NCBI RefSeq assembly: GCF_016433145.1
Contig: NC_058130.1
Coordinates: 167,035,972 to 167,099,971 of the forward strand
Length of the DNA stretch: 64,000 nucleotides
Reading direction: 5' to 3'
Source of the DNA: Gracilinanus agilis
Taxonomy: Eukaryota
Positions 1-10,855 of the stretch are shown piece after piece (position 1 is the first letter of the stretch; every line of letters starts with the position of its first letter). Below the pieces are notes generated by a model. It made no database searches. It saw only the letters and a list, made by a program, of their open reading frames with translations, and had not been told where the DNA came from. A program made the translations under genes and the position numbers.

Positions 1-1002
1 CCCTGACTCCTCCCCCCAACCCCCCACCCTTACCCCTCTCCGAGTGGGCTCCCTCCACCCTTTTTCTCACACACAATGCACATTCCCATCCCTGACCCCC
101 TTCCCAGCCCCCTGCACATTCCGGTTCCTCTTCCTCTCCCACATACACACTTTACCATTTGAGCCTCTGGAATGCAGATACCCCCAAACTTTCCTGTCCC
201 TGTCTTGTCTCCCCTAGACCTTTCCCAAATTTATACAGCACATGCTGATGTTCCTATCCCCACCTGTTCCCTTTCTCTCTGGAAAGCACTTTCCAGCCCC
301 AAGCATGCAGCTAGCTACCCCATCCCAGACCCCCCATAGGCGTACTACAGCCCCCCAAAGCTCTCCACCTCAGTCCCTCCCCAGAAACTGCTGCCCCCGG
401 GTGTATTGACATCCTGCATCCATCCTAAGCTCTCTTTACTCCCACTTTCATTTTACAGTTCTAGCCCCATGTACTCCCCTTTGCCCATGACTCCTATTCC
501 CAAAAAATACCTGGAGATTTACATTTGGAGGGGCTGCCCCAAGCCACTACCCCACAGATGCCCCGCCTGTCCCTATTCACACACACAGCCTGGCATTACC
601 TACCCTTTGGTGGCTACTTACACCCTTGGGAGGGTTAGCCCATCAGCCCCAAGCACAGCCAACATTCCTTATCCTCCACCATTCCCAAGACTCATACACT
701 GTTATATCCATTTATATCTCTTGGACAAACCATCTCCCTGGACTACCAGATCCCTTGACCCCTCTGGTACCACCCTTCCTGATCCCTGAAACCCTTCTGT
801 ATGTCAGCTAATGTGCACACCTCCAATAGTTCCCTTCCTCTCCAGCACCCCAAATCCCTCCCTGTGCTCCGCTGGTCCCAACCAGGCTAGCTCAGGTCTT
901 TTTGTTTTTTGTCTGTGTCCCACAGGCCATCTGTGACAGTCCCTTCCCCCAAGTCTCTCTTTTCCTAGGGTCTTGGTAGCCAGTGTAGAGGGAGGATCCT
1001 GA

Positions 1003-3494
1003 ATGATGCCCAGGGGCCGGGCCTGGACCCAGCAGGAGATCAGCTGCCTCCTGACCCTGATCCAGGACTCTGGGGAGGTCACATTGCTCATGGCCTCCAC
1101 TTCAAGGCCTAATGAGGCCTTGTGGCAGTCCATCTCCCAAGGGTTGGGGGCATCAGGCTATGGTCGAAGTGTGGCTCAGTGTCGATCTAAGTGGAAGGCA
1201 TTGAAGCAGGCCTTCTACTCAGAGTGGGAAACAAGTCGCCAGGCAGGAGGTCCCTCCTCTCAGCCCCCACCCCACTACCGCACCATGAAGAGGCTGTGGA
1301 AGGCTGCCGGGAGGCCTGTTTTTGGAGAACGTCGCCTGCCAGGTAAAGGAATACCCCTGGTGATGGGCCTCAGGGAGCCACTTTTTAACCTGCTTGTTTC
1401 TTTAAGGACCCTTTGGGTTAGCAGGAAAAGGAAAAGGGTTGCAAGTGTCTTCTTCCACACTCCATACTTATTCCTAGTCCTGCTAGGTCTGGTGAAGCTC
1501 CCACCTGGGAAGCACTGCACTCAGCTGGAGGCCCCCACCAGAGCTGAGCTACTGGAAGAGTGGGTGGCTAGAAGGAGAGGCACATTCAATCAGCAATCTA
1601 TTAAGTGCCTGCTGTGTACCAGACACGGCTTCCTCCTGAGGATAAAAAGACAAAAATAAAACAGCACACAATGCAGTCTTGGGAATGATGCAGAGATTTC
1701 TGGAATACAAAATTTCTGGTGGGGAACAAGGCACTTTATTTAGCCTTGAGCTGACATTCTTCTCTCCAACTACCTAGGCTCTGAAACAAACCTTGAAGCA
1801 GGTCCGCCATCTTGTGCCAAGAAAGAAACTAATAGTAAGTATTTCCAGCAGCTGTGGTCTAGAAGGAAGCTGAGGCTGAGGCCTATGGGACTTGGTGGAA
1901 AGGCAGAACTGGAACAAGAATTTGTGTGCCCTAGGCAGGGTTGGTAAATGGCCACCTTCTCCTTTGTTGGGTCCAAGTCAACACAACAGACATTCATTGG
2001 GTTCTTACTACACACTTGGCACTGATCTGGTTGCTGGAGATACAAAGGTAGAGATGAAACAGACTCTGCCTTCAAGGAACTTCTCTTCTTCTGGGGGGAT
2101 ACAACATAATTTGAAGAGGAAGAGACAACTGCTGACTGGTGCAGATCCAGGAAGGTTTCATAGAGAAAAAGAAGAGGAGGAGGCAGTGGCACCTGAACTA
2201 AGCTTTACAGTCCCTAGTCCACCCGAGACTTCTCTGGAGGACGTGTGCCCATGTGCAGCAGCAAGCATAATTTTCTGGGATTTAAACATGTACATTTTGT
2301 TAAAAGTGTCCTATTTGGCATGCTTCCCTCTCAATTGAGGTCTATACTGTGGAACCAGTGAGGTAGTCTTTCCCTACCTGGCACTTGTGGGAAAATAAGA
2401 TAGGAGAGGCTAGATTAAAGATGTCCATGGATGGGGTCCACATTAGGGTCAGCAGATAAAAGCTGAATGTATCTGTCCTTCCTCTGCAGCTCCTGAGGAG
2501 AAGCAGGACAGCCCTCCCCCCTCCCAGCTTCCAGGTAAGACCAATGAGTTTTGTTTTTCTTAGGTTTGGGATAGAGAACATGGAGTTGAGGAGGGAAGTG
2601 ATTTAGCAGACAGCAATACTATAGGGAAAGGGTCAAAGGGGTTGGATCACTAGACTTTCCCTTGGCTATTCCCCTCAGATTCCTGGTGCACCCCGTGCCC
2701 CACTTACTTAGAACCTTTCTCACTGTAAGGGAACTAGCTAACTTTGTCCATTTCCCCAATCTGTCTTCAAAGAAGCTGAGAACAGCCCCTACCTTGGAGC
2801 TGGATGAGCAAGGGGGTCTCCCAAGGCTGAGTTGGGAGTAAAAAGGGATAGAATCCTCATTGCAGTGAAGGATCATATAGAAGTGGAGCCCAACAGGACT
2901 TAGCAAGGTTTTTTTTTGTTTTTTTTTTTTTGCCTCTCCCTACCCCCCCCTTTCCCCAGAAGAGCCTCCAGCCTTGGTGCCAGAGATCCCAGTGAGGCCA
3001 GATCTGGTGCCTGAAGTGGCCAGAGAAGAGCCAGCCCATGTTTCAGTGCTCCAAGGTAAGCTGCATCCTTCTCCCATCCTTCTCTGGGGCTTGGGGCCTG
3101 GTCACAGGCCTCCATCTCCCACTGGTGCACTGTTGCAGGCCCTGGGGTGGTGAGCCTTCTCCAGAACATGCAGGAGCTTCTGGTGCAGATCTTGCAAACA
3201 TCAAGACAGCAGCAGGCACTGCTCGAGAGCTTGGCCCAGGACACCGTCTCCCACCTGCACCTGCTGTCCGATGGCCTGGGCCAGATGGGCCAGACCTTGC
3301 AGGCCCTGTTGATGCACAGCCCCAGCTGGCAGAGCCCCCGCTCCCTGCTCACGCCCGCACATACTGGCACTCGTTCTCACCCCTCCGTCCTGGGCCTGCA
3401 CTCTCCCCATTCTCCCTCCATTCCTGCTGCCCCCGTTGGCCCCTGCCTGAAGGAGGAGACCATCTTGCCCCCTCCCAGGTTTGCTCCATTATGA
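1003..3494 (+). CDS. Uncharacterised Myb/SANT-like (Myb_DNA-bind_4 / trihelix-type) DNA-binding domain protein with C-terminal coiled coil, ~297 aa, 5 coding exons
   Basis: Exons 1003-1342, 1778-1834, 2490-2534, 2960-3055 and 3139-3494. All introns are GT-AG and phase 1; total 894 nt, open frame, in-frame TGA directly before the ATG. N-terminus WTQQEISCLL...LWQSISQGLGASGYGRSVAQCRSKWKALKQAFY...PPHYRTMKRLW fits the MSANTD/ZSCAN29-type Myb/SANT-like signature. C-terminus LLQNMQELLVQILQTSRQQQALLESLAQ is heptad-like. ATTAAA at 3710-3715. Confidence 0.8.
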
Positions 3495-4318
3495 ATGTGA
3501 ACCCTCTCCCCAATGCTGTGGCGAGAGCCAGTAAGACCACTCTGTCTCTGATTTCCTTTTTTCCTGCCAGTGACTACAGAGCCCTTGCTTCCCTACCCCT
3601 GGTAGTCTGTACCCAAGACTGGAGACTTTTATGTAAATGTCCTCATATTTTAGAAAATATTTAATTTAAAAGAAACACGCATCCTTTTTTTACAGTGAGA
3701 GATTATTTGATTAAAGAAAAAAAATCGAAATAGCCGGAGAGGGGGCCGTGCCCCTGACTCCACCCTGTTCTTTCAGTTTCTTGGAACCTGTATTAGGGGG
3801 CTGAAGATGAGTGCCTCGGGCATCCCCCATCCTTTCAGGTGCCTGGCACCTCAGTGCAGACATCCCAGCTTAGTGGGCTCTCACACCCTTGCTTGCTTTC
3901 TGGGGCTCTTGTGTGCACATGCTTGTTCTAGCACATCTGCTCCTCCCAGGCAATCATGGCCCCCTCAGCCCCCAAATACCACCACCGCTTCCTGTGTTTC
4001 CGAAGAAGCTAGAGATGTGTCACGGGGGCCGGAACTGGCTAACCTCAGAAGGACTGAGATGGGAGGGGGTGCAAAAGCAACCTCCATCCAGCAGGGGTGT
4101 CTGAAAGTGGAGTTGGTCTCATGCCCCAGCGGGTAGCTTCCCCAGCTTTCTAGCATACCCAGGTGGGCTTCTCTCTCCCCCTGCTCTCTCCCATGGTCAT
4201 AACCCAAATTAAAGTGACCATGGGCTGAGCAGGGAGGTTGGGCCCTGTGTACTACAGCCTCTTTCCTCTCCTCTCTCCCCCCTGAGATGCATTTGGCACT
4301 TCAGCATGAGTCTTCCAG

Positions 4319-5306
4319 TCATCCATCCCCTGGCTGGCTGTTGGCATAGTCCTCATCGGGAAAGGTTGCTCGGCGGGCCTGGGATCCCACAGAAGCATAG
4401 AGTTCAGGCTCTGGGAGCCGGGGCAGGGGTGCAGGCTGCTCAGCATCCAACACCATCAGCACCTCCGAGTACTTGATGGGTGGCCCAGGACTGGGCCCTG
4501 GGGAGCGTCCCAGAGGGGGCTGCAGCTGCAGGCTGGCATAGCACATAGCTTCTTCCCCTGCCTGGGGACACAGAGGCAGATTAGGGGGTATGTGGGGACC
4601 TCAGGACCTCCTCTTCCTTAGCTTCCCTGCCCTTTGTGCCCCAGATCAGACTTACTCGAGGGAGGTCTCCTGTGGGTGGTTCTTGTAGGGTGGACCCTGG
4701 CTTCTGTGGGAGCCTCCCTGAGACAGGATGGAATTAGACCCTCGTTTATAAGTTCCTGAGGCCCTCTATCCCCCCTCATCACTTTGCTTCCCCCCAATTG
4801 CCTCACCTGTCTGCAGATATGTCAAGTTCCCATAGAGGGGTACCTCTTCCACAGGCCTTTTGGGGCTGCAATAGAAAGGAGGAGGGGGAGTGGATGAACA
4901 AGAAAGATGGGAAAGGCTGGAGTGCAAAAATATCCCTTTGGAGTCTAAGAGAGATTAGGGATGACTGAGGGGATGGCCTCTCTCTGGTGCCTCTCCTCAA
5001 AAGTACTCACCATTCCTGTCCCTGGAAGGTCCTGTTCTTCTCTCTGGTCCATCGGGCTAGGTGTTCAGCCAGTACCAAAAGCAGCAACAGGGACACCACC
5101 CCAAGCAGGGCCCACAGCCCATAGGCACACTGCAGGTCAGGGAATCCTGAAAGGAATAGTCACTAGGCCATCACCACACCCTCTTCTTGACCTGGCCCTT
5201 CCCCTTCAGCCAAGAAGCCATCCCCCACCTCCTCCCTGCTCAGACCCATCCACCCTCCTGTCCCCACCTCACCAGCTGTAGCATTTTCACATTTTCCCCC
5301 CATCAT
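4319..5306 (-). CDS. SIT1: Signalling threshold-regulating transmembrane adaptor 1, 177 aa, 5 exons
   Basis: Exons 5306-5273, 5146-5011, 4865-4807, 4717-4656 and 4561-4319; 534 nt, open. Protein MMGGKCENATAGFPDLQCAYGLWALLGVVSLLLLLVL... carries the SIT tyrosine motifs YGNL, YASL, YSEV, YASV and YANS. Synteny with RMRP/CCDC107. Confidence 0.95.
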
Positions 5307-6560
5307 TAATGCCAAAGATATCAGGGTCTGAGCCTACTGAGGGAAACCTGCAGTGCCCCTCAATCCCCTAGAGCTAGGTCCCTCTAGGCTCAGAGCCCCA
5401 GTTGCTTTCCTCTGTGGACAAAGACAAGGACAGAGCCCCTGTCCGCGCCTCAGTCACTCAGCCCCTGGCAGCTCAGCACATCAGCTGCAGCTATGAAAGC
5501 CACAGGAGCTTCCTTCCGGAGCAGAGATGGGGGAAACATCTTCCCCTCCCCAGATACGGGAGTCCCCTGAAATGTCTCCTACTCTCATTTCCTTTCTTCC
5601 CTCTACTTTAACCTCATTGTTCCTAGGGAATATTGAGGGAAGATATTCAGTGTTGACTTAAAGGTACTGGATTTCAGATCTACTAACCTGGGGCACTTTG
5701 GCCCAAGCCTCTTTATGATAAATCTGCTGCTGCTATGCCTTCCTATCTCTGAGAATCCCAAGCACAGGCCTTGCCATGCGCTGGAGAGAAGGAACAGATG
5801 AGGGATGGAGGGGAGGAATGAAATTCAAGACCTGATCTGAAAACTAGTTCTCCTTTCTAGTTTCCTCCTTACCAGAATCACCCACCTCAATTCTCCCAGA
5901 GTAGAAGGAACTTCCCCTCCCGGTTACCCCTTCTTTAACTCAATCTTTTCCTGGTCTATGTGCTACACGATTTATCTACTGTCTCTCCTCTTTCTATTCC
6001 CAGGATACCCACCTTAGTTTAGAACTCTTCCCTTTTTTTTTGGATTGCTAGAACAGCCTTCTAATTGGCCTCCCTTGCTATCTGCCTTTTCTTGTCTGCA
6101 ACATGCCCTCAACTTAGTCTTCCTAATGCTCAGATCTGATGGCATAACTCCCCTCCCTCAACCATATCTCAGCAGCACCCTAGTAAAAATTTCTTGCCCT
6201 CTTTGTTCTGACCCCAACCCTCCTTATCAGCCACCTCACTTTAGTTTCCTCTAAGCTATAGTTAAAGGTTAGGGCTTAACTTTCCTTTAAACTTGAATTA
6301 CAATGAACAGGGCAAGTGAGCTCTAGTGTCTCCAGCTCTGCCTTCATCTTTTCCCTTTCTGTTGGTATCTAGCTTTCTGGTGTTCAGTGCTTCCTTCTTT
6401 CCAACCTCCTGGCCTGGTCAGATAATAGCCCTTCTACAAAGACAAGAAGGCCCAGAGCATTCATCTCCTTCAACTACTTTCTTTTTTATGTAGGTGGGAG
6501 AGAAGAGAAAGGAGATACTACCCCCTCAAGTTTCCTTTTCCATTAAAGTGTGATCTCCCT

Positions 6561-6760
6561 GGGGCAGCTGGGTAGCTCAGTGGATTTAGAGCCAGGCCTA
6601 GAGACGGGAGGTCCTAGGTTCAAATCCGGCCTCAGACACTTCCCAGCTGTGTGACCCTGGGCAAGTCACTTGACCCCCATTGCCTACCCTTACCAATCTT
6701 CCACCTATAAAGTCAATATACAGAAGTTAAGGGTCTAAAATAAAAAAATAAATAAATAAA
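6561..6760 (+). mobile_element. Young tRNA-derived SINE (SINE1_Mdo-like) with 15-bp TSD
   Basis: GGGGCAGCTGGGTAGCTCAGTGG head, B-box GGTTCAAATCC, CORE segment and A-rich tail; flanks AAAGTGTGATCTCCC / AAAGTGTGACCTCCC. Confidence 0.9.
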
Positions 6761-7099
6761 GTGTGACCTCCCATCTAGGCTGAGGATTATTTTAGGATGC
6801 TGGGGTAGTGGAGCCTGGGCCAAGAGCTCCTTGGATGATATCTCCTCCCTCATCCCAAGCCAGAAACCCTTCTCTGCACCCAGGAAGGAAAGTCAAGTTT
6901 GTTACTATTAGTACAGAACTAACAGGCTTCTGTGGCTCATTCTAGGAATCTAATCTGAAATTTTTATTTCAGAAAATGGAATAAGAGTTCCAAGGACCCT
7001 ATTTGCAAAAGAACAGTTGACTGTTAAACTTAAGGATAGCCCTTTAGAGTTTCATACTAACACTCCAATTCATTCTCTTGTTTATTCACTAAAATAATT

Positions 7100-8760
7100 T
7101 CCCTAAAACAGGTCTGATGGTGTCCCCCCTATCTAATAAGTTTCAATAACTCTCTGTAACCTCCAGGGCCAAATGCAAAATGTTCTGTTTGCTATTTATA
7201 ATCTAATTCTCCTACCTTCCCAGGCTTCTTACACCTTATTCCTTACCATTGGCTGTTCCATCTCTCTGCACTGAGCATTTTCTATGGCATCCCCCATGCC
7301 AGGAACATTCCCACTTCCCTGCTTTAACTGCTGACCTCCCTAGCTTCCTTGAAGTCCCAACTAAAATCCCATCTTTGATGAGAAGCCTTTCCCATCCCCT
7401 CTTACCTCTAGTGCCTTCTCAGCCATTTCCTAGGTAGCCCTTGTGTGTCCTTCCCCTTCCCCTGCCCCTCCAGTTGGATTGTGAGCTTCTTGAGAGTGGG
7501 CACTTTCTTTTGCCTCTTGGATCCCTAGTGCTTAGCATAATGCCTAACTAGGCACTTATTAAAATACTTATTGACCAACTCTCCTCCCCAAATCCTGCCC
7601 TTATATCAGACTAAGGGACTTCAACATCCATTGATTCTCCCTCAAGTGCCTTAAACGCTCATTTTCACAACCTATTCACTTCCCACAACCTACCCCTCCA
7701 CCCAACCTCAGCCACATACAAAGATGGTTATACTTTTGATCTTGTCACCACCTCCCTGTTAAAGAATTCTGAAACCCTCTTATCTGGCTTTTCATCTCTC
7801 AGCCATCTGTTGCATAACCCTACTTTTCATCCTCACTGTGATCTCCAGGCCCTTGACCCCCACAATTCTCTCCAGGCTATCTCCCCTGTACTAGCCACTC
7901 TCTCCTAGTCTCCCCATCTTATGGTGAACCCATTCAACTGGATACTTTCTTCCTCTATTGAATTCCTAGGCCCTTTATCAGAGTGCCCATGTCACCCAGC
8001 CAGGCCTCAGTCTTGGATCACTCCCACCCTTTGTTGCCTTTGTGCAACTTTAGAAAGAAGGTGAAGATGACAAATGCTCTGACTGTGTCCAGGACAAATT
8101 TATCATACATGATCTCAACTGGACCTTCAACAACCCTGTGGCTGAACAAACCTCCTGTGCCTGCCTTGTCAATTTATTATCATTCTTCCCTAACTCAAAG
8201 TTCCCCCAGCTCCCCCCACCTCGCCTCAGCTGGCAACTTTGACTCACATTTTACAGGAAAAAAAGTTCATTTGATAGGAACTCCATCTTCCCTCTTCCTC
8301 ATCCCCTATCACTCAGATACCTTCTGCCACTCTCTCCTCCACCCCTTTCACATGACAAGGTAGCCTTCCTCCTTACCAAGGCTAAGTCCTTTACCTCATT
8401 CCATTCTTTCTCCCTCCCACAAGTTGCCCCCTCTGTCATCCTGACTCACTTATTTTTTATCTCTCCTTGCCCCGACTCATTTCCTACTGGCTGCAAACAT
8501 GCCCATGCCTCTCCCCAGCCTGAGAAAACCCTTACTGAATGCCTTCGTCCCTGCTCTCATCCTCTTTCTCTTCTGTCCTTCCTGGCCCCTACAGTAGATG
8601 CCTCCACTCCCTGGCACTCTCTTCTTAATGTCTCACAATTTGGCTTCTGACCTGATCATGGCACTGAAACTGCTCTCTCCAAAGTGCTAATGACCTTTTC
8701 TCAATCCTCATGGTCCTTGGCCTCATGGTCCTCAACCCGTGACACTGCTGATCCCCCCCA
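7100..8760 (+). mobile_element. Degraded LINE-2 fragments (3' end, then endonuclease-region fragment)
   Basis: Decayed GDFNIH...TH.DG.T.DLV-like coding remnant near 7615-7750 and L2-type C/T-rich composition. Boundaries are approximate. Confidence 0.65.
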
Positions 8761-8975
8761 TACTCAATCACCCTAGAAGGACCAGGGCTAGGCAATAGGG
8801 GCCAAGTGACTTGCTAGGAAGTGTCTGAGGTCAAATTTGAACCGAGACTACCCGGACTTCACCCAGATTCCCAGTCTGGAGTTTTTTGTGTGTGCAGATC
8901 TACTCTTTTAGCTTGCTCCTAGAGGGCTCCCCTTGGGCATTGCGTCAGGCACCACAGAATGTTGTTTTTGCAACT

Positions 8976-8979
8976 AAAA
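8976..8979 (-). terminator. Pol III T-run terminator of RMRP
   Basis: TTTT on the minus strand a few nt after the conserved 3' end, plus further short T runs. Confidence 0.7.
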
Positions 8980-8983
8980 GAGA

Positions 8984-9265
8984 AGACGCGCTGAGAATGA
9001 GCCCCGTGGAGTTAGTGCGCATGAGACGCACTGCCTGCGTAACTATCCAATTCTTGACTAAGGTTGGCCTCACCGCGCTCACTCCGCTCAGTGCTTCCAC
9101 TAAGGTAGAAGAACCTCTTGGCGGGAAGATATGGAGCTGCGACATAGGCCAGACGCACGTGTGTGCGTGGCACTTTCTGCCCGCGGTCCGGGGACTTTCC
9201 CCTAGGCGCAGAGTGGGGAACATGTCCCCCGTACGTAGCCTAGGTAACAGGCCTTCAGCAAGCGC
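8984..9265 (-). ncRNA. RMRP: RNase MRP RNA
   Basis: Minus strand reads GCGCTTGCTGAAGGCCTGT...CGCCTAGGGGAAAGTCCCCGGACC...GGGCAGAAAGTGCC (GARAR loop)...TAGTTACGCAGGCAGTGCG...GGGGCTCATTCTCAGCGCG, followed by a TTTT terminator at 8976-8979. Ends are approximate. Confidence 0.97.
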
Positions 9266-9290
9266 CTCCGAGTTGGCCCTTGGCACACAT

Positions 9291-9667: not shown

Positions 9668-10855
9668 ATGCCAGTCCCGGGGCTCAGCGGCCAGGCGCTG
9701 GTCCCGGCCGCTCTGGCGCTGCTACTCGTGGGCGTAGCGCTCCGAGTCTTCGAGGGCGGCGCCGGACCGCGGCCCCCCGCAGGTAATAGGCAGCAGAAGG
9801 AGGGGAGGAGAGTGGTGCGATCGGAGATGGGGACCTCCTCGCGCTACTCTGCGGTCGTGACCGCGACTCTGCTTTCACTGTGTAGGCGAGGCATCCCGAG
9901 ACGAGCAGCGGAAGACGTCGGAGGAGCCTCGGGCGGCTGGTCCACCGTGGGGGCCACTGCCCTTGGGAGCCTTGTATGCCGTGGGCGTCCTGGCCTTCGT
10001 GCTGCGCCGGTGTCTGCAGGTGTGGGGGCCCGGATCCCCGGGGTGGGGAATGGTTGACGCCCGCAGGGGGGGTCCCACTCCTGTAGGAGCCCTTGGGTGT
10101 GGTAGAGGACCGACCTGCCTTATCTCATTTTAGGGACAAGATGAGGCCGAAGTTTCCCCAAAGGAGAAGCCCACCGAGAAGGACCTTTTGCACAGAGGTG
10201 AAGGCCATGGGGGTGTGGTAGGGGCAGCGGGGCAAATAGAAGTGGGCTGGCCCTGTGACAAATGGCTCTTACTTTCCTAGAAGAGCAACTGGCCCAAAAG
10301 CTAGCGAAGACAGAGCAACTTCTGGGCGGCCTGCTGGATCAGCTGGACCCTCTCTTTGAGCGGTGAGAGGTGGTGGGCCCAGGACGGGATGAGGGTGGTG
10401 CTGGGGCATGGAAGAAGGCTAGTAAGAGGCGGCCTGACTGAGCATCTCTGCAGTGTGGACGCTCTGGCTGGAGCCCAGCAGGACCTGCTGACCTTAAGAC
10501 TTCAGACCATCAGCCAGCTGTTAAAGGACAAGGGGCTGGACACCACTGCAGCTTCCCAAGGTAGGGGTCCTTGGATAGAATATCAGATATTTGTGTCTGA
10601 TATTGTCTGATTTGAGGACTCATGCTGCCCCCTTCCCCCCCACACACAGAGTACAACCCCCCTATCCATGAGGACCCGAGTGCTGAGGAAGATGATGGCA
10701 GTGACCTTCAGACCTGGGGTTGGGGGGAGGAACCTGAGGAGAGAGGAACTGAGGCCTGGGCTCCACATGTCTCCTGGGACCAATTTGGGGAAAATGGAAA
10801 GTTGTGGGGACTCAGGAGGAGGAAATGGATTACAGGAATCCAAGTCACAGACTAA
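9668..10855 (+). CDS. CCDC107: Coiled-coil domain-containing protein 107, 235 aa, 6 exons
   Basis: Exons 9668-9782, 9886-10019, 10134-10197, 10281-10362, 10454-10560 and 10650-10855; 708 nt, open. Recognisable LPLGALYAVGVLAFVLRRCLQ, QLDPLFERVDALAGAQQDLL and WGLRRR. AATAAA at 10973-10978. Confidence 0.93.

What the first reader, a model, noticed from the sequence alone, without database searches (positions are those of the whole stretch)
1003..3494. Uncharacterised intact Myb/SANT-like (trihelix-type) DNA-binding gene tail-to-tail with SIT1
Seen: five exons with canonical splice sites. The three internal exons (57, 45, 96 nt) are all symmetric phase 1-1 and give an open 297-aa frame with an N-terminal Myb/SANT-like domain, a Pro/Glu-rich linker and a C-terminal coiled coil. 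Known: this architecture typifies MSANTD/NAIF1-type proteins, several of which derive from the DNA-binding ORF of PIF/Harbinger transposons. I know no named protein-coding gene between CD72 and SIT1 in human. Inference: a conserved but unnamed, or lineage-restricted, domesticated-transposon-type transcriptional regulator beside lymphocyte genes, possibly lost in some eutherians.
Basis: partly seen in the sequence, partly recalled or inferred. Interest (0 to 1): 0.78.

Follow-up and report, generated by a model that had tools for sequence, protein, structure and literature searches.

The report
Conserved UTF1-like trihelix gene beside SIT1
This is a real, spliced and strongly conserved gene for a small DNA-binding (trihelix Myb/SANT) protein with a leucine-zipper tail; amphibians, reptiles, birds and marsupials have it, no placental mammal or monotreme protein matches it, and it may bear on how the placental stem-cell gene UTF1 arose.

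Summary
The five exons, four GT..AG introns, phase 1 junctions and 297-codon frame are all there. The database protein P0002 (Gracilinanus agilis, uncharacterized LOC123231064) contains all five exon peptides in the predicted order. Contigs from three runs join all five exons at the predicted junctions with no mismatch.

The protein has three parts:
- Residues 1-105 form a GT-1-type trihelix domain (PF13837, 55 bits).
- Residues 106-180 form a disordered Pro/Glu-rich linker.
- Residues 181-238 form one confident eight-heptad Leu/Gln helix.

Orthologues with both conserved blocks occur in caecilians, salamanders, squamates, turtles, crocodilians, birds and all marsupials found. Two word searches and one profile search of 1.8 billion representatives found no eutherian or monotreme protein. 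Among four marsupials, dN/dS is 0-0.03 in the Myb exon and 0-0.10 in the helix.

Nearly all annotations call it "uncharacterized", but NCBI names the chicken orthologue UTF1. Eutherian UTF1 has the same two-module layout and is published as eutherian-only with unclear origin. I could not obtain a UTF1 sequence, so that link is untested.

Harbinger ancestry is plausible for the wider domain family: a gecko relative sits beside a DDE_Tnp_4 transposase. It is not shown for this gene. The gene itself is a new member of a known kind.

The parts
900..1002 (+). 5' leader (transcribed, non-coding). An in-frame TGA lies at 1000-1002. A possible splice acceptor AG lies at 924-925.
   Evidence: RNA-type contigs cover 900-1032 and 923-1028 (records 9 and 14). 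Sequence read.
1003..1342 (+). Exon 1 coding part (codons 1-113 plus 1 nt). It encodes the whole Myb/SANT-like trihelix domain.
   Evidence: (PF13837, E 9.5e-15), (joint 1340/1776, cut +2).
1012..1317 (+). Trihelix (GT-1-type Myb/SANT-like) DNA-binding domain, residues 4-105. Model helices are 10-23, 26-31, 38-50, 57-81 and 92-102.
   Evidence: AF2 pLDDT is about 90. The best Foldseek match is Arabidopsis GT-1, 2ebi/2jmw. The PDB profile hit to GT-1 has E 1.7e-6. W8, W41 and W64 are invariant.
1778..1834 (+). Exon 2 (57 nt, phase 1-1), linker.
   Evidence: joints 1340/1776 and 1834/2490.
2490..2534 (+). Exon 3 (45 nt, phase 1-1), linker.
2960..3055 (+). Exon 4 (96 nt, phase 1-1), Pro/Glu-rich linker.
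3139..3494 (+). Exon 5 coding part, including the stop TGA at 3492-3494.
   Evidence: joint 3053/3137, cut +2.
3141..3314 (+). Conserved block 2, residues 181-238. It is one long amphipathic helix of eight heptads. The d positions are L187 L194 S201 L208 T215 L222 M229 L236. The a positions are V184 Q191 L198 Q205 A212 L219 L226 L233.
   Evidence: AF2 pLDDT is about 93. It contains 23 invariant columns across 17 tetrapod orthologues. Heptad read-out. dN/dS is 0-0.10.
3495..3691 (+). 3' UTR, at least as far as the contigs reach.
   Evidence: Contigs end at 3631, 3680 and 3691.
4319..4927 (-). Neighbour read as SIT1, convergent (tail-to-tail). Its last coding exons carry YGNL, YSEV, YASV and YANS motifs. 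This is context, not part of the gene.
   Evidence: ORFs 4319-4546 and 4766-4927. The gene at the same relative position in Trichosurus has a faint PF15330:SIT hit. Pfam on the window pieces themselves was negative.

Best explanation
The locus is a working single-copy host gene, RefSeq LOC123231064 of Gracilinanus agilis. It encodes a 297-residue nuclear chromatin or DNA-binding regulator.

The basic N-terminal GT-1-type trihelix domain most likely contacts DNA or chromatin. The acidic Pro/Glu-rich linker is a flexible spacer. The C-terminal eight-heptad Leu/Gln helix most likely drives self-association or docking to a conserved partner.

The protein would therefore act as an oligomeric transcriptional regulator. 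By analogy with UTF1, it is probably a repressor-type factor that stays bound to chromatin.

The gene dates at least to the tetrapod ancestor. It is kept in caecilians, salamanders, sauropsids and marsupials, and it appears to have left this locus or been lost in eutherians and monotremes.

Shown here: the gene structure, splicing, domain identity, fold, conservation, purifying selection and taxonomic spread. Inferred: DNA binding, oligomerisation and regulatory role.
For: - Structure and frame.
- All five exon peptides are found in a database protein in the predicted order.
- Spliced contigs in three runs.
- PF13837 at 55 bits. It is found in 17 of 17 orthologues.
- GT-1 is the best match by sequence profile (E 1.7e-6) and by fold (prob 1.0, 32% identity, TMt 0.61).
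- The AF2 model has a confident N-terminal domain, one confident 58-residue helix and a disordered linker and tail.
- Two conserved blocks run from salamander to marsupial. Block 2 is found only in the orthologue group.
- Among four marsupials all splice sites and the stop are kept and there are no indels. dN/dS is 0.06-0.20 overall and 0-0.03 in the Myb exon, with dS 0.26-0.37 between orders.
- Synteny: the neighbours are the SIT1 candidate, the next 235-residue gene and a RhoGEF gene in four marsupials. In emu and chicken there are Lectin_C genes upstream.
- Charge pattern: the Myb domain has 14 K/R against 6 D/E. The linker has 15 P and 14 D/E in 75 residues. The helix has 15 L and 11 Q in 58 residues.
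Against: - No experiment shows DNA binding, oligomerisation or any target.
- SANT-like domains can bind histones rather than DNA.
- Conservation in block 2 covers several faces of the helix (L186, Q188, Q191, E209, S210, H220 and S223 are invariant). It may therefore be a partner-binding surface rather than a simple zipper.
- The tissues of the three expressing samples are unknown.
- The run type is not on record.
- Absence from eutherians and monotremes rests on protein collections, not on genome searches.
Confidence: 0.85

Rival explanations
1. The gene is the non-eutherian orthologue, or the direct progenitor, of UTF1. On this reading, the eutherian stem moved a copy to the KNDC1-VENTX interval, where it evolved fast, and the copy beside SIT1 was lost. 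UTF1 would then be an old tetrapod gene rather than a eutherian invention derived from ZSCAN20-like.
For: - The two-module layout is the same. UTF1 has CD1 Myb/SANT at residues 55-124 and CD2, a putative leucine zipper, at residues 271-334 of 339 (PMC2064617). Here the trihelix is at 4-105 and the eight-heptad Leu helix at 181-238 of 297.
- The taxonomic spread is complementary. UTF1 is reported only in eutherians (PMC3706607). This gene is found in every tetrapod group seen except eutherians and monotremes; frogs gave only a domain-level hit.
- The published opossum search used blastx and named only an annotated protein (ZSCAN20-like) as its best hit, so an unannotated gene could have been missed. 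My own inference is that the opossum gene's identifier LOC130455554 is recent.
- The nearest named non-orthologous relative here is ZSCAN20-like. That is the same subgroup to which UTF1 was tied.
Against: - No eutherian UTF1 sequence could be obtained from any tool, so homology of block 2 with CD2 and a tree including UTF1 were never tested.
- Names given by annotation pipelines are leads, not tests. All other birds remain 'uncharacterized'.
- The locus differs: SIT1/RMRP synteny here against KNDC1-VENTX for UTF1.
- This gene has five exons. UTF1 has two.
- No Sox-Oct composite element like that of UTF1 lies near the gene.
- No UTF1-like representative was recognisable among the 150 best hits of the profile search.
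Confidence: 0.4
2. The gene is a domesticated Myb-like ORF of a PIF/Harbinger transposon, a further member of the MSANTD/NAIF1 class of co-opted genes.
For: - The gecko protein P0161 matches the family profile at E 3.8e-19.
- It lies in a 7.4-7.6 kb segment present at 99% identity on three chromosomes.
- That segment has a DDE_Tnp_4 transposase ORF about 1 kb upstream on the same strand, E 1.9e-30.
- MSANTD1 and MSANTD2 are published as Harbinger-derived (PMC9392472). That they carry the same Pfam domain type is my own recollection and was not checked here.
- The gene is single-copy and syntenic, as a domesticated gene should be.
Against: - In the domain tree the orthologue group sits in the half that holds the ZSCAN20-like and KRAB-Myb proteins. 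It does not sit with the Harbinger clade, and the deep forks are unresolved.
- PF13873, the NAIF1/MSANTD3 type, is below its cutoff.
- No transposon relative carrying block 2 was seen.
Confidence: 0.3
3. It is a decaying or non-functional ORF, either an unprocessed pseudogene or a chance open frame, that gene-prediction pipelines happen to annotate.
For: - Nearly all names are 'uncharacterized'.
- The promoter region is CpG-poor, with observed/expected CpG of 0.07-0.2.
- No run is on record as RNA.
Against: - The 113-residue Myb exon is 100% identical between didelphids and bilby, with 18-24 synonymous changes between marsupial orders.
- All splice sites, the stop and the frame are kept in four marsupials.
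- Orthologues run back to amphibians.
- Spliced contigs occur in three samples.
Confidence: 0.02

Closest known systems
[quoted passage not shown]
   Same: The layout is the same: an N-terminal Myb/SANT-like domain, a long Pro-rich disordered linker and a roughly 60-residue leucine-zipper-type helix near the C-terminus (PMC2064617). The size is similar, 297 against 339 residues. NCBI gives the chicken orthologue this name.
   Different: The genomic location differs: beside the SIT1 candidate and RMRP here, against KNDC1-VENTX for UTF1. This gene has five exons against two. It is extremely conserved (Myb exon dN/dS 0-0.03), whereas mouse and human UTF1 are only 62% identical (PMC3706607). No Sox-Oct element lies nearby. 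Sequence homology outside the Myb domain was not tested.
Plant GT-1 / trihelix DNA-binding domain (PDB 2jmw, 2ebi; Pfam PF13837 Myb_DNA-bind_4)
   Same: It is the best solved relative by profile (E 1.7e-6) and by fold (prob 1.0, 32% identity). It shares three helices with conserved tryptophans, followed by a fourth helix.
   Different: GT-1 is a plant factor with no relation outside the domain. The vertebrate protein adds its own conserved C-terminal helix, which is found only in the orthologue group among the proteins held.
ZSCAN20 / ZSCAN20-like (SCAN + Myb_DNA-bind_4 + zinc fingers)
   Same: It is the nearest named non-orthologous relative of the Myb domain: P0146, 88.7 bits to the block 1 model. 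It falls in the same half of the domain tree.
   Different: This gene has no SCAN, KRAB or zinc-finger domains and only one Myb domain. It has a zipper helix instead.
MSANTD1-4 and NAIF1 (Harbinger Myb-like derived genes; PMC9392472)
   Same: They are small vertebrate proteins built around one Myb/SANT-like trihelix domain. They are fixed, syntenic and under negative selection.
   Different: That survey started from human proteins, so it could not have found a gene missing from eutherians. The PF13873 type of MSANTD3/NAIF1 is below cutoff here. No direct comparison with MSANTD1 or MSANTD2 was possible.

Membership tests
Pfam PF13837 Myb_DNA-bind_4 (GT-1-type trihelix) | Score above the curated gathering cutoff | tested here: met
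   55.2 bits against a cutoff of 27 for exon 1. All 17 of 17 orthologues match.
Pfam PF13837 Myb_DNA-bind_4 (GT-1-type trihelix) | Helical fold with regularly spaced conserved tryptophans, similar to the solved GT-1 structure | tested here: met
   W8, W41 and W64 are invariant. The AF2 helices are confident. The top Foldseek hits are 2ebi and 2jmw, with prob 0.99-1.0 and TMt 0.61, but the E-value is only 0.03.
Pfam PF13837 Myb_DNA-bind_4 (GT-1-type trihelix) | Binds DNA | not testable with these tools
   Only the net basic charge of the domain is known: 14 K/R against 6 D/E.
Pfam PF13873 Myb_DNA-bind_5 (NAIF1/MSANTD3 type) | Score above the curated gathering cutoff | tested here: not met
   20.1 bits for exon 1 and 17.2 bits for the whole protein, against a cutoff of 21.7.
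Domesticated Harbinger Myb-like gene | Significant similarity to the Myb-like ORF of a bona fide Harbinger element | tested here: met
   P0161 matches at E 3.8e-19. It lies in a three-copy, 99%-identical element with a DDE_Tnp_4 ORF.
Domesticated Harbinger Myb-like gene | Branches from within transposon sequences in a phylogeny | tested here: inconclusive
   The orthologue group falls in the other half of the tree from the Harbinger clade. Deep forks have support of 83/52 or lower, and only one sequence is verified as a transposon ORF.
Domesticated Harbinger Myb-like gene | Single copy at a fixed syntenic position, without a transposase | tested here: met
   There is one copy in the window. 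The neighbours are the same in four marsupials. The Lectin_C and Galactosyl_T neighbours are conserved in sauropsids.
UTF1 | N-terminal Myb/SANT domain plus a C-terminal conserved domain with a leucine zipper | tested here: met
   compared with the published domain map (PMC2064617). This shows shared architecture only.
UTF1 | Sequence homology to eutherian UTF1 over both conserved domains, and grouping with UTF1 in a tree | not tested
The only pointers are source names: chicken 'UTF1' and Limosa 'UTF1-like'.
UTF1 | Position between KNDC1 and VENTX | tested here: not met
   The gene lies beside the SIT1 candidate and RMRP. The literature reports nothing UTF1-like between KNDC1 and VENTX in opossum or wallaby.
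UTF1 | Sox2-Oct4 composite enhancer at the 3' side of the gene | tested here: not met
   The pattern CWTTGTNATGCW with up to one mismatch has no match between 1 and 6293. The nearest is at 6294. This is a crude motif test in one species only.

The most novel reading that the evidence does not exclude
The gene beside SIT1 is the ancestral UTF1. On this reading, eutherian UTF1 is published as a eutherian-only innovation, possibly made from ZSCAN20-like, but is in fact the relocated and rapidly diverging descendant of a tetrapod-wide trihelix-plus-zipper gene. Marsupials, birds, reptiles and some amphibians would still keep that gene, almost unchanged, at its original place.
Probability: 0.4. Interest if true: 0.75.

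Novelty: new member of a known kind. Interest (0 to 1): 0.6.

Why it matters
A transcription-factor-type gene that is nearly frozen in sequence across marsupials, and recognisable back to amphibians, has no placental-mammal or monotreme counterpart in the protein collections and no published description that I could find.

It was invisible to surveys that start from human proteins, such as the MSANTD/Harbinger study (PMC9392472).

It also makes an open question directly testable. The authors of the UTF1 evolution paper state that how UTF1 arose is unclear, and they found no orthologue outside eutherians. This gene has the UTF1 architecture, the complementary taxonomic spread, and the UTF1 name in chicken. 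A simple alignment and tree would show whether UTF1 is an old gene that moved or a true eutherian novelty.

Either way, marsupial and chicken systems offer a way to study what this protein does.

Tried and rejected
**UTF1 sequence.** I tried to reach a eutherian UTF1 sequence in three ways, and none worked.
- A word search with block 2 at E up to 10.
- Inspection of the 150 best profile hits for UTF1-like length, domain position or composition.
- Following P0187, the most orthologue-like unnamed fragment. It proved to be a caecilian protein.

**Other checks that led nowhere or were set aside.**
- A Sox-Oct composite motif near the gene: none found.
- Pfam on the two SIT1 ORF pieces: no hit. 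SIT1 identity rests on the tyrosine motifs and a faint annotation hit in Trichosurus.
- CD72: tblastn of the chicken neighbour lectin against 10 kb upstream in four marsupials gave nothing.
- The 52 loose letters before position 923 in one contig were not found within 10 kb upstream.
- Two contig look-ups, for wombat and devil, failed because only the longest isoform is on record.
- The weak similarity of block 2 to the RFXAP C-terminal domain (E 0.18 against PDB; PF15289 in 9 of 17 members at E below 1) I judged to be probably compositional (Leu/Gln-rich helix). I did not pursue it.
- X2, a run of a related organism, covers introns as well as exons, so it says nothing about splicing.

- The joined spliced protein was never built or sent to a tool. 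Searches used exon-wise references, the natural read-through ORF 1003-1656 restricted to residues 1-113, and the database protein P0002.
- No human sequence was consulted.
- The N stretches were left alone.
Full report
**1. The observation**

Reading window 800-3800 confirms the model base by base. The exons are 1003-1342, 1778-1834, 2490-2534, 2960-3055 and 3139-3494 on the + strand. Each intron begins GT and ends AG. Every junction splits a codon after its first base.

The coding length is 340+57+45+96+356 = 894 nt, which is 297 codons plus TGA at 3492-3494. An in-frame TGA at 1000-1002 stands directly before the ATGATG start. The exon-wise translations are open.

Instead I found that P0002, returned by the word search, contains the five exon peptides at residues 1, 115, 134, 149 and 181, with exactly one junction residue between them. 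P0002 is 'uncharacterized protein LOC123231064' of Gracilinanus agilis, 297 residues. Its gene lies on CM028235.1 of assembly GCA_016433145.1 and spans 2492 nt, the same as 1003-3494.

**2. Transcription and splicing**

The run index lists one run that holds 0.99 of the stretch's words. It also lists three small runs from the same organism and study that hold 0.30-0.34, about the exonic share.

Laid on 900-3700, each of the three small runs gives one contig of 935-1023 nt. Each contig runs through all five exons with skips 1340/1776, 1834/2490, 2530/2956 and 3053/3137. All skips are GT..AG and equal the predicted junctions within the stated cut shifts. There are no mismatches and no intron cover. 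The contigs reach 3631-3691 at the 3' side and at least 900 at the 5' side.

The run type is not on record, so 'RNA' is my inference from spliced, intron-free contigs.

One contig has 52 unplaced letters before 923, next to an AG at 924-925. This hints at an upstream non-coding exon, but those letters are not within 10 kb upstream. A run of a related organism covers introns too and is uninformative.

**3. The protein**

- **Domain identity.** Exon 1 alone matches PF13837 Myb_DNA-bind_4 at E 9.5e-15, 55.2 bits against a cutoff of 27. PF13873, the NAIF1/MSANTD3 type, is below its cutoff at 20.1 against 21.7 bits.
- **Solved relatives.** A profile of 17 orthologues finds the Arabidopsis GT-1 trihelix domain as the only significant solved relative, E 1.7e-6.
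- **Model.** The AlphaFold2 model built on that alignment has four parts:
  - a confident helical domain at residues 4-105, pLDDT about 90;
  - disorder at 106-178;
  - one continuous helix at 181-238, pLDDT about 93;
  - a disordered tail.
- **Fold search.** Foldseek against the PDB puts GT-1 (2ebi, 2jmw) first, with prob 0.99-1.0, 32% identity and TMt 0.61. Other Myb, SANT and Zeste domains follow. No hit reaches E 0.001.
- **Composition.** The domain is basic, with 14 K/R against 6 D/E. The linker is acidic and proline-rich. The helix has 15 Leu and 11 Gln in 58 residues.
- **Heptads.** Read in heptads, the helix has L187 L194 S201 L208 T215 L222 M229 L236 at one core position. It has V184 Q191 L198 Q205 A212 L219 L226 L233 at the other. 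This is a leucine-zipper-type pattern of eight heptads.

**4. Relatives and spread**

A word search with exon 1 gave 120 proteins. The query was the natural read-through ORF 1003-1656, restricted to residues 1-113 so that full-length proteins fell within the length filter. Identities over exon 1 were:

| Group | Identity over exon 1 |
|---|---|
| All marsupials found (296-298 residues) | 98-100% |
| Turtles | 82-85% |
| Birds | about 63-79% |
| Squamates | 73-76% |
| Alligator | 73% |
| Salamanders | 63% |

A second word search with block 2, at E up to 10, returned the same kinds of animals.

The profile search of 1.84 billion representatives gave 480 hits, 31 of them at E 1e-30 or better. Every top-tier representative that carries a name is a bird, turtle, crocodilian, squamate, salamander, caecilian or marsupial. 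The two that carry no name are C-terminal fragments from Logan or ENA.

The caecilian Microcaecilia has both blocks. The frog Ascaphus gives only a domain-level match. No eutherian, monotreme or fish protein appears in any of the three searches. Because eutherians are the most densely annotated tetrapods, this is good evidence that no intact annotated orthologue exists there. It is not a genome search.

In the 17-sequence alignment two blocks are conserved, residues 1-113 and about 181-240, with 74 invariant columns. The linker is free to vary. An HMM of block 2 finds only the orthologue group among all the proteins held.

**5. Selection**

I located the exons in Monodelphis, Trichosurus and Dromiciops loci. 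All align without gaps, and all eight splice dinucleotides and the TGA are kept. Nei-Gojobori counts were summed exon by exon without joining.

| Region | dN/dS |
|---|---|
| Whole gene | 0.06-0.20 |
| Myb exon | 0-0.03 |
| Helix | 0-0.10 |
| Linker | 0.15-0.32 |
| Tail | 0.12-0.46 |

In the Myb exon, 18-24 synonymous but only 1-2 non-synonymous differences separate marsupial orders. This excludes a pseudogene.

**6. Neighbourhood**

In four marsupials the gene is followed, tail to tail, by a 175-266-residue gene. That gene has a faint PF15330:SIT hit in Trichosurus. Next come a 235-residue gene and a RhoGEF gene.

In the window the convergent ORFs carry YGNL, YSEV, YASV and YANS in order. From my own knowledge, these are the signalling tyrosines of SIT. 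RNase MRP RNA lies at 8985-9267 on the minus strand, as beside human SIT1, again from my own knowledge.

In tortoise, emu and lizard the downstream neighbour is instead a single-exon Galactosyl_T gene. In emu and chicken, C-type lectin genes lie head to head upstream. The chicken gene is on the 86-Mb record CM028522.1 at 9.61 Mb, with a DUF3522 gene downstream.

No lectin exons lie within 10 kb upstream in the marsupials, so 'between CD72 and SIT1' is unverified.

**7. Transposon ancestry**

Below the orthologue tier comes a continuum of Myb_DNA-bind_4 proteins from amphibians, coelacanth and squamates. It includes 'ZSCAN20-like' SCAN+Myb proteins and KRAB+Myb proteins.

One of them, gecko P0161 (E 3.8e-19), is encoded on three chromosomes inside a 7.4-7.6 kb segment that is 99% identical between copies. 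A DDE_Tnp_4 ORF (E 1.9e-30) lies upstream on the same strand. This is a young PIF/Harbinger element.

The domain family therefore does include Harbinger Myb-like ORFs. In a maximum-likelihood tree of 61 domains, however, the orthologue group sits in the half that holds the ZSCAN20-like and KRAB-Myb proteins. It does not sit with the Harbinger clade, and the deep forks are weak. Domestication of this particular gene is neither shown nor excluded.

**8. The UTF1 lead**

[quoted passage not shown] A Limosa annotation says 'UTF1-like'.

According to PMC2064617, UTF1 consists of CD1, a Myb/SANT domain at residues 55-124, and CD2, a putative leucine zipper at residues 271-334 of 339. Both ends are needed for stable chromatin association and repression. 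That is the architecture found here.

[quoted passage not shown] It calls the origin of UTF1 unclear. It proposes derivation from opossum ZSCAN20-like, on 36% identity in one SANT domain found by blastx.

The distributions of UTF1 and of this gene are complementary, so relocation of one gene is an economical reading.

I could not test it. No tool returned a eutherian UTF1 sequence, and I did not type one. Against it stand the different locus, five exons against two, and the lack of a Sox-Oct motif near the gene. I put this reading at about 0.4.

**9. Verdict**

The MSANTD/NAIF1 affiliation and the transposon origin are not established. The closest named relatives are ZSCAN20-like and, by annotation, UTF1.

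The most likely mechanism is a trihelix domain that binds DNA or chromatin, tethered by a flexible linker to a zipper helix that oligomerises or docks a partner. This would give a UTF1-like chromatin regulator. The binding and oligomerisation steps are inferred, not shown.

Noticed in passing
window 8985-9267 (-): A full-length RNase MRP RNA gene (RF00030, 175.9 bits, model 1-266 of 266) lies a few kb beyond the SIT1 candidate. This fits the SIT1-RMRP order that I know from human 9p13.3.
   Followed up: no
window 923-926: One contig (X22, record 14) has 52 unplaced letters before 923, next to an AG at 924-925. This may be an upstream non-coding exon of the gene. The letters do not occur within 10 kb upstream. 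Another contig runs colinear through this point.
   Followed up: partly
L010 3078-10699 (also L011, L012; Eublepharis macularius): A young PIF/Harbinger element of about 7.5 kb is 99% identical on three chromosomes. It has a DDE_Tnp_4 ORF (L010 4291-4995) and an intron-containing Myb_DNA-bind_4 gene (6001-8982). Its 3' end carries a variable array of roughly 236-bp tandem repeats (9932-10699, more copies in L012).
   Followed up: partly
L009 128-817 (-) and 1428-2756 (+) (chicken, Logan contig of SRR18455591): One 2830-nt contig holds the intron-free coding sequences of both the C-type lectin neighbour and the chicken 'UTF1' orthologue, head to head and about 600 nt apart. This suggests overlapping or bidirectional 5' ends in chicken.
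   Followed up: no
L002-L004 (tortoise, emu, lizard), downstream of the orthologue: In sauropsids a single-exon Galactosyl_T (PF01762) gene lies tail to tail where marsupials have the SIT1 candidate. The downstream neighbour changed between the lineages while the lectin side stayed.
   Followed up: no
P0123, P0257, P0149, P0150 (Microcaecilia unicolor): The caecilian has two loci of the orthologue (LOC115462756 and LOC115461768). Judging by consecutive accession numbers, each has a further Myb_DNA-bind_4 gene next to it. This looks like a local duplication of a gene pair.
   Followed up: no
P0002 residues 148-214 (window exons 4-5): There is a weak resemblance to the RFXAP C-terminal domain that binds RFX5 and RFXANK (PDB 2kw3_C, E 0.18; PF15289 in 9 of 17 orthologues at E below 1). 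It may be only Leu/Gln-rich helix composition.
   Followed up: no
P0120 (wombat isoform X2, 370 aa), P0015 (Petaurus, 343 aa), P0131-P0134 (birds): Several species have annotated isoforms that keep block 2 but replace or lack the N-terminal part of the Myb domain. This hints at alternative first exons that would give zipper-only products.
   Followed up: no
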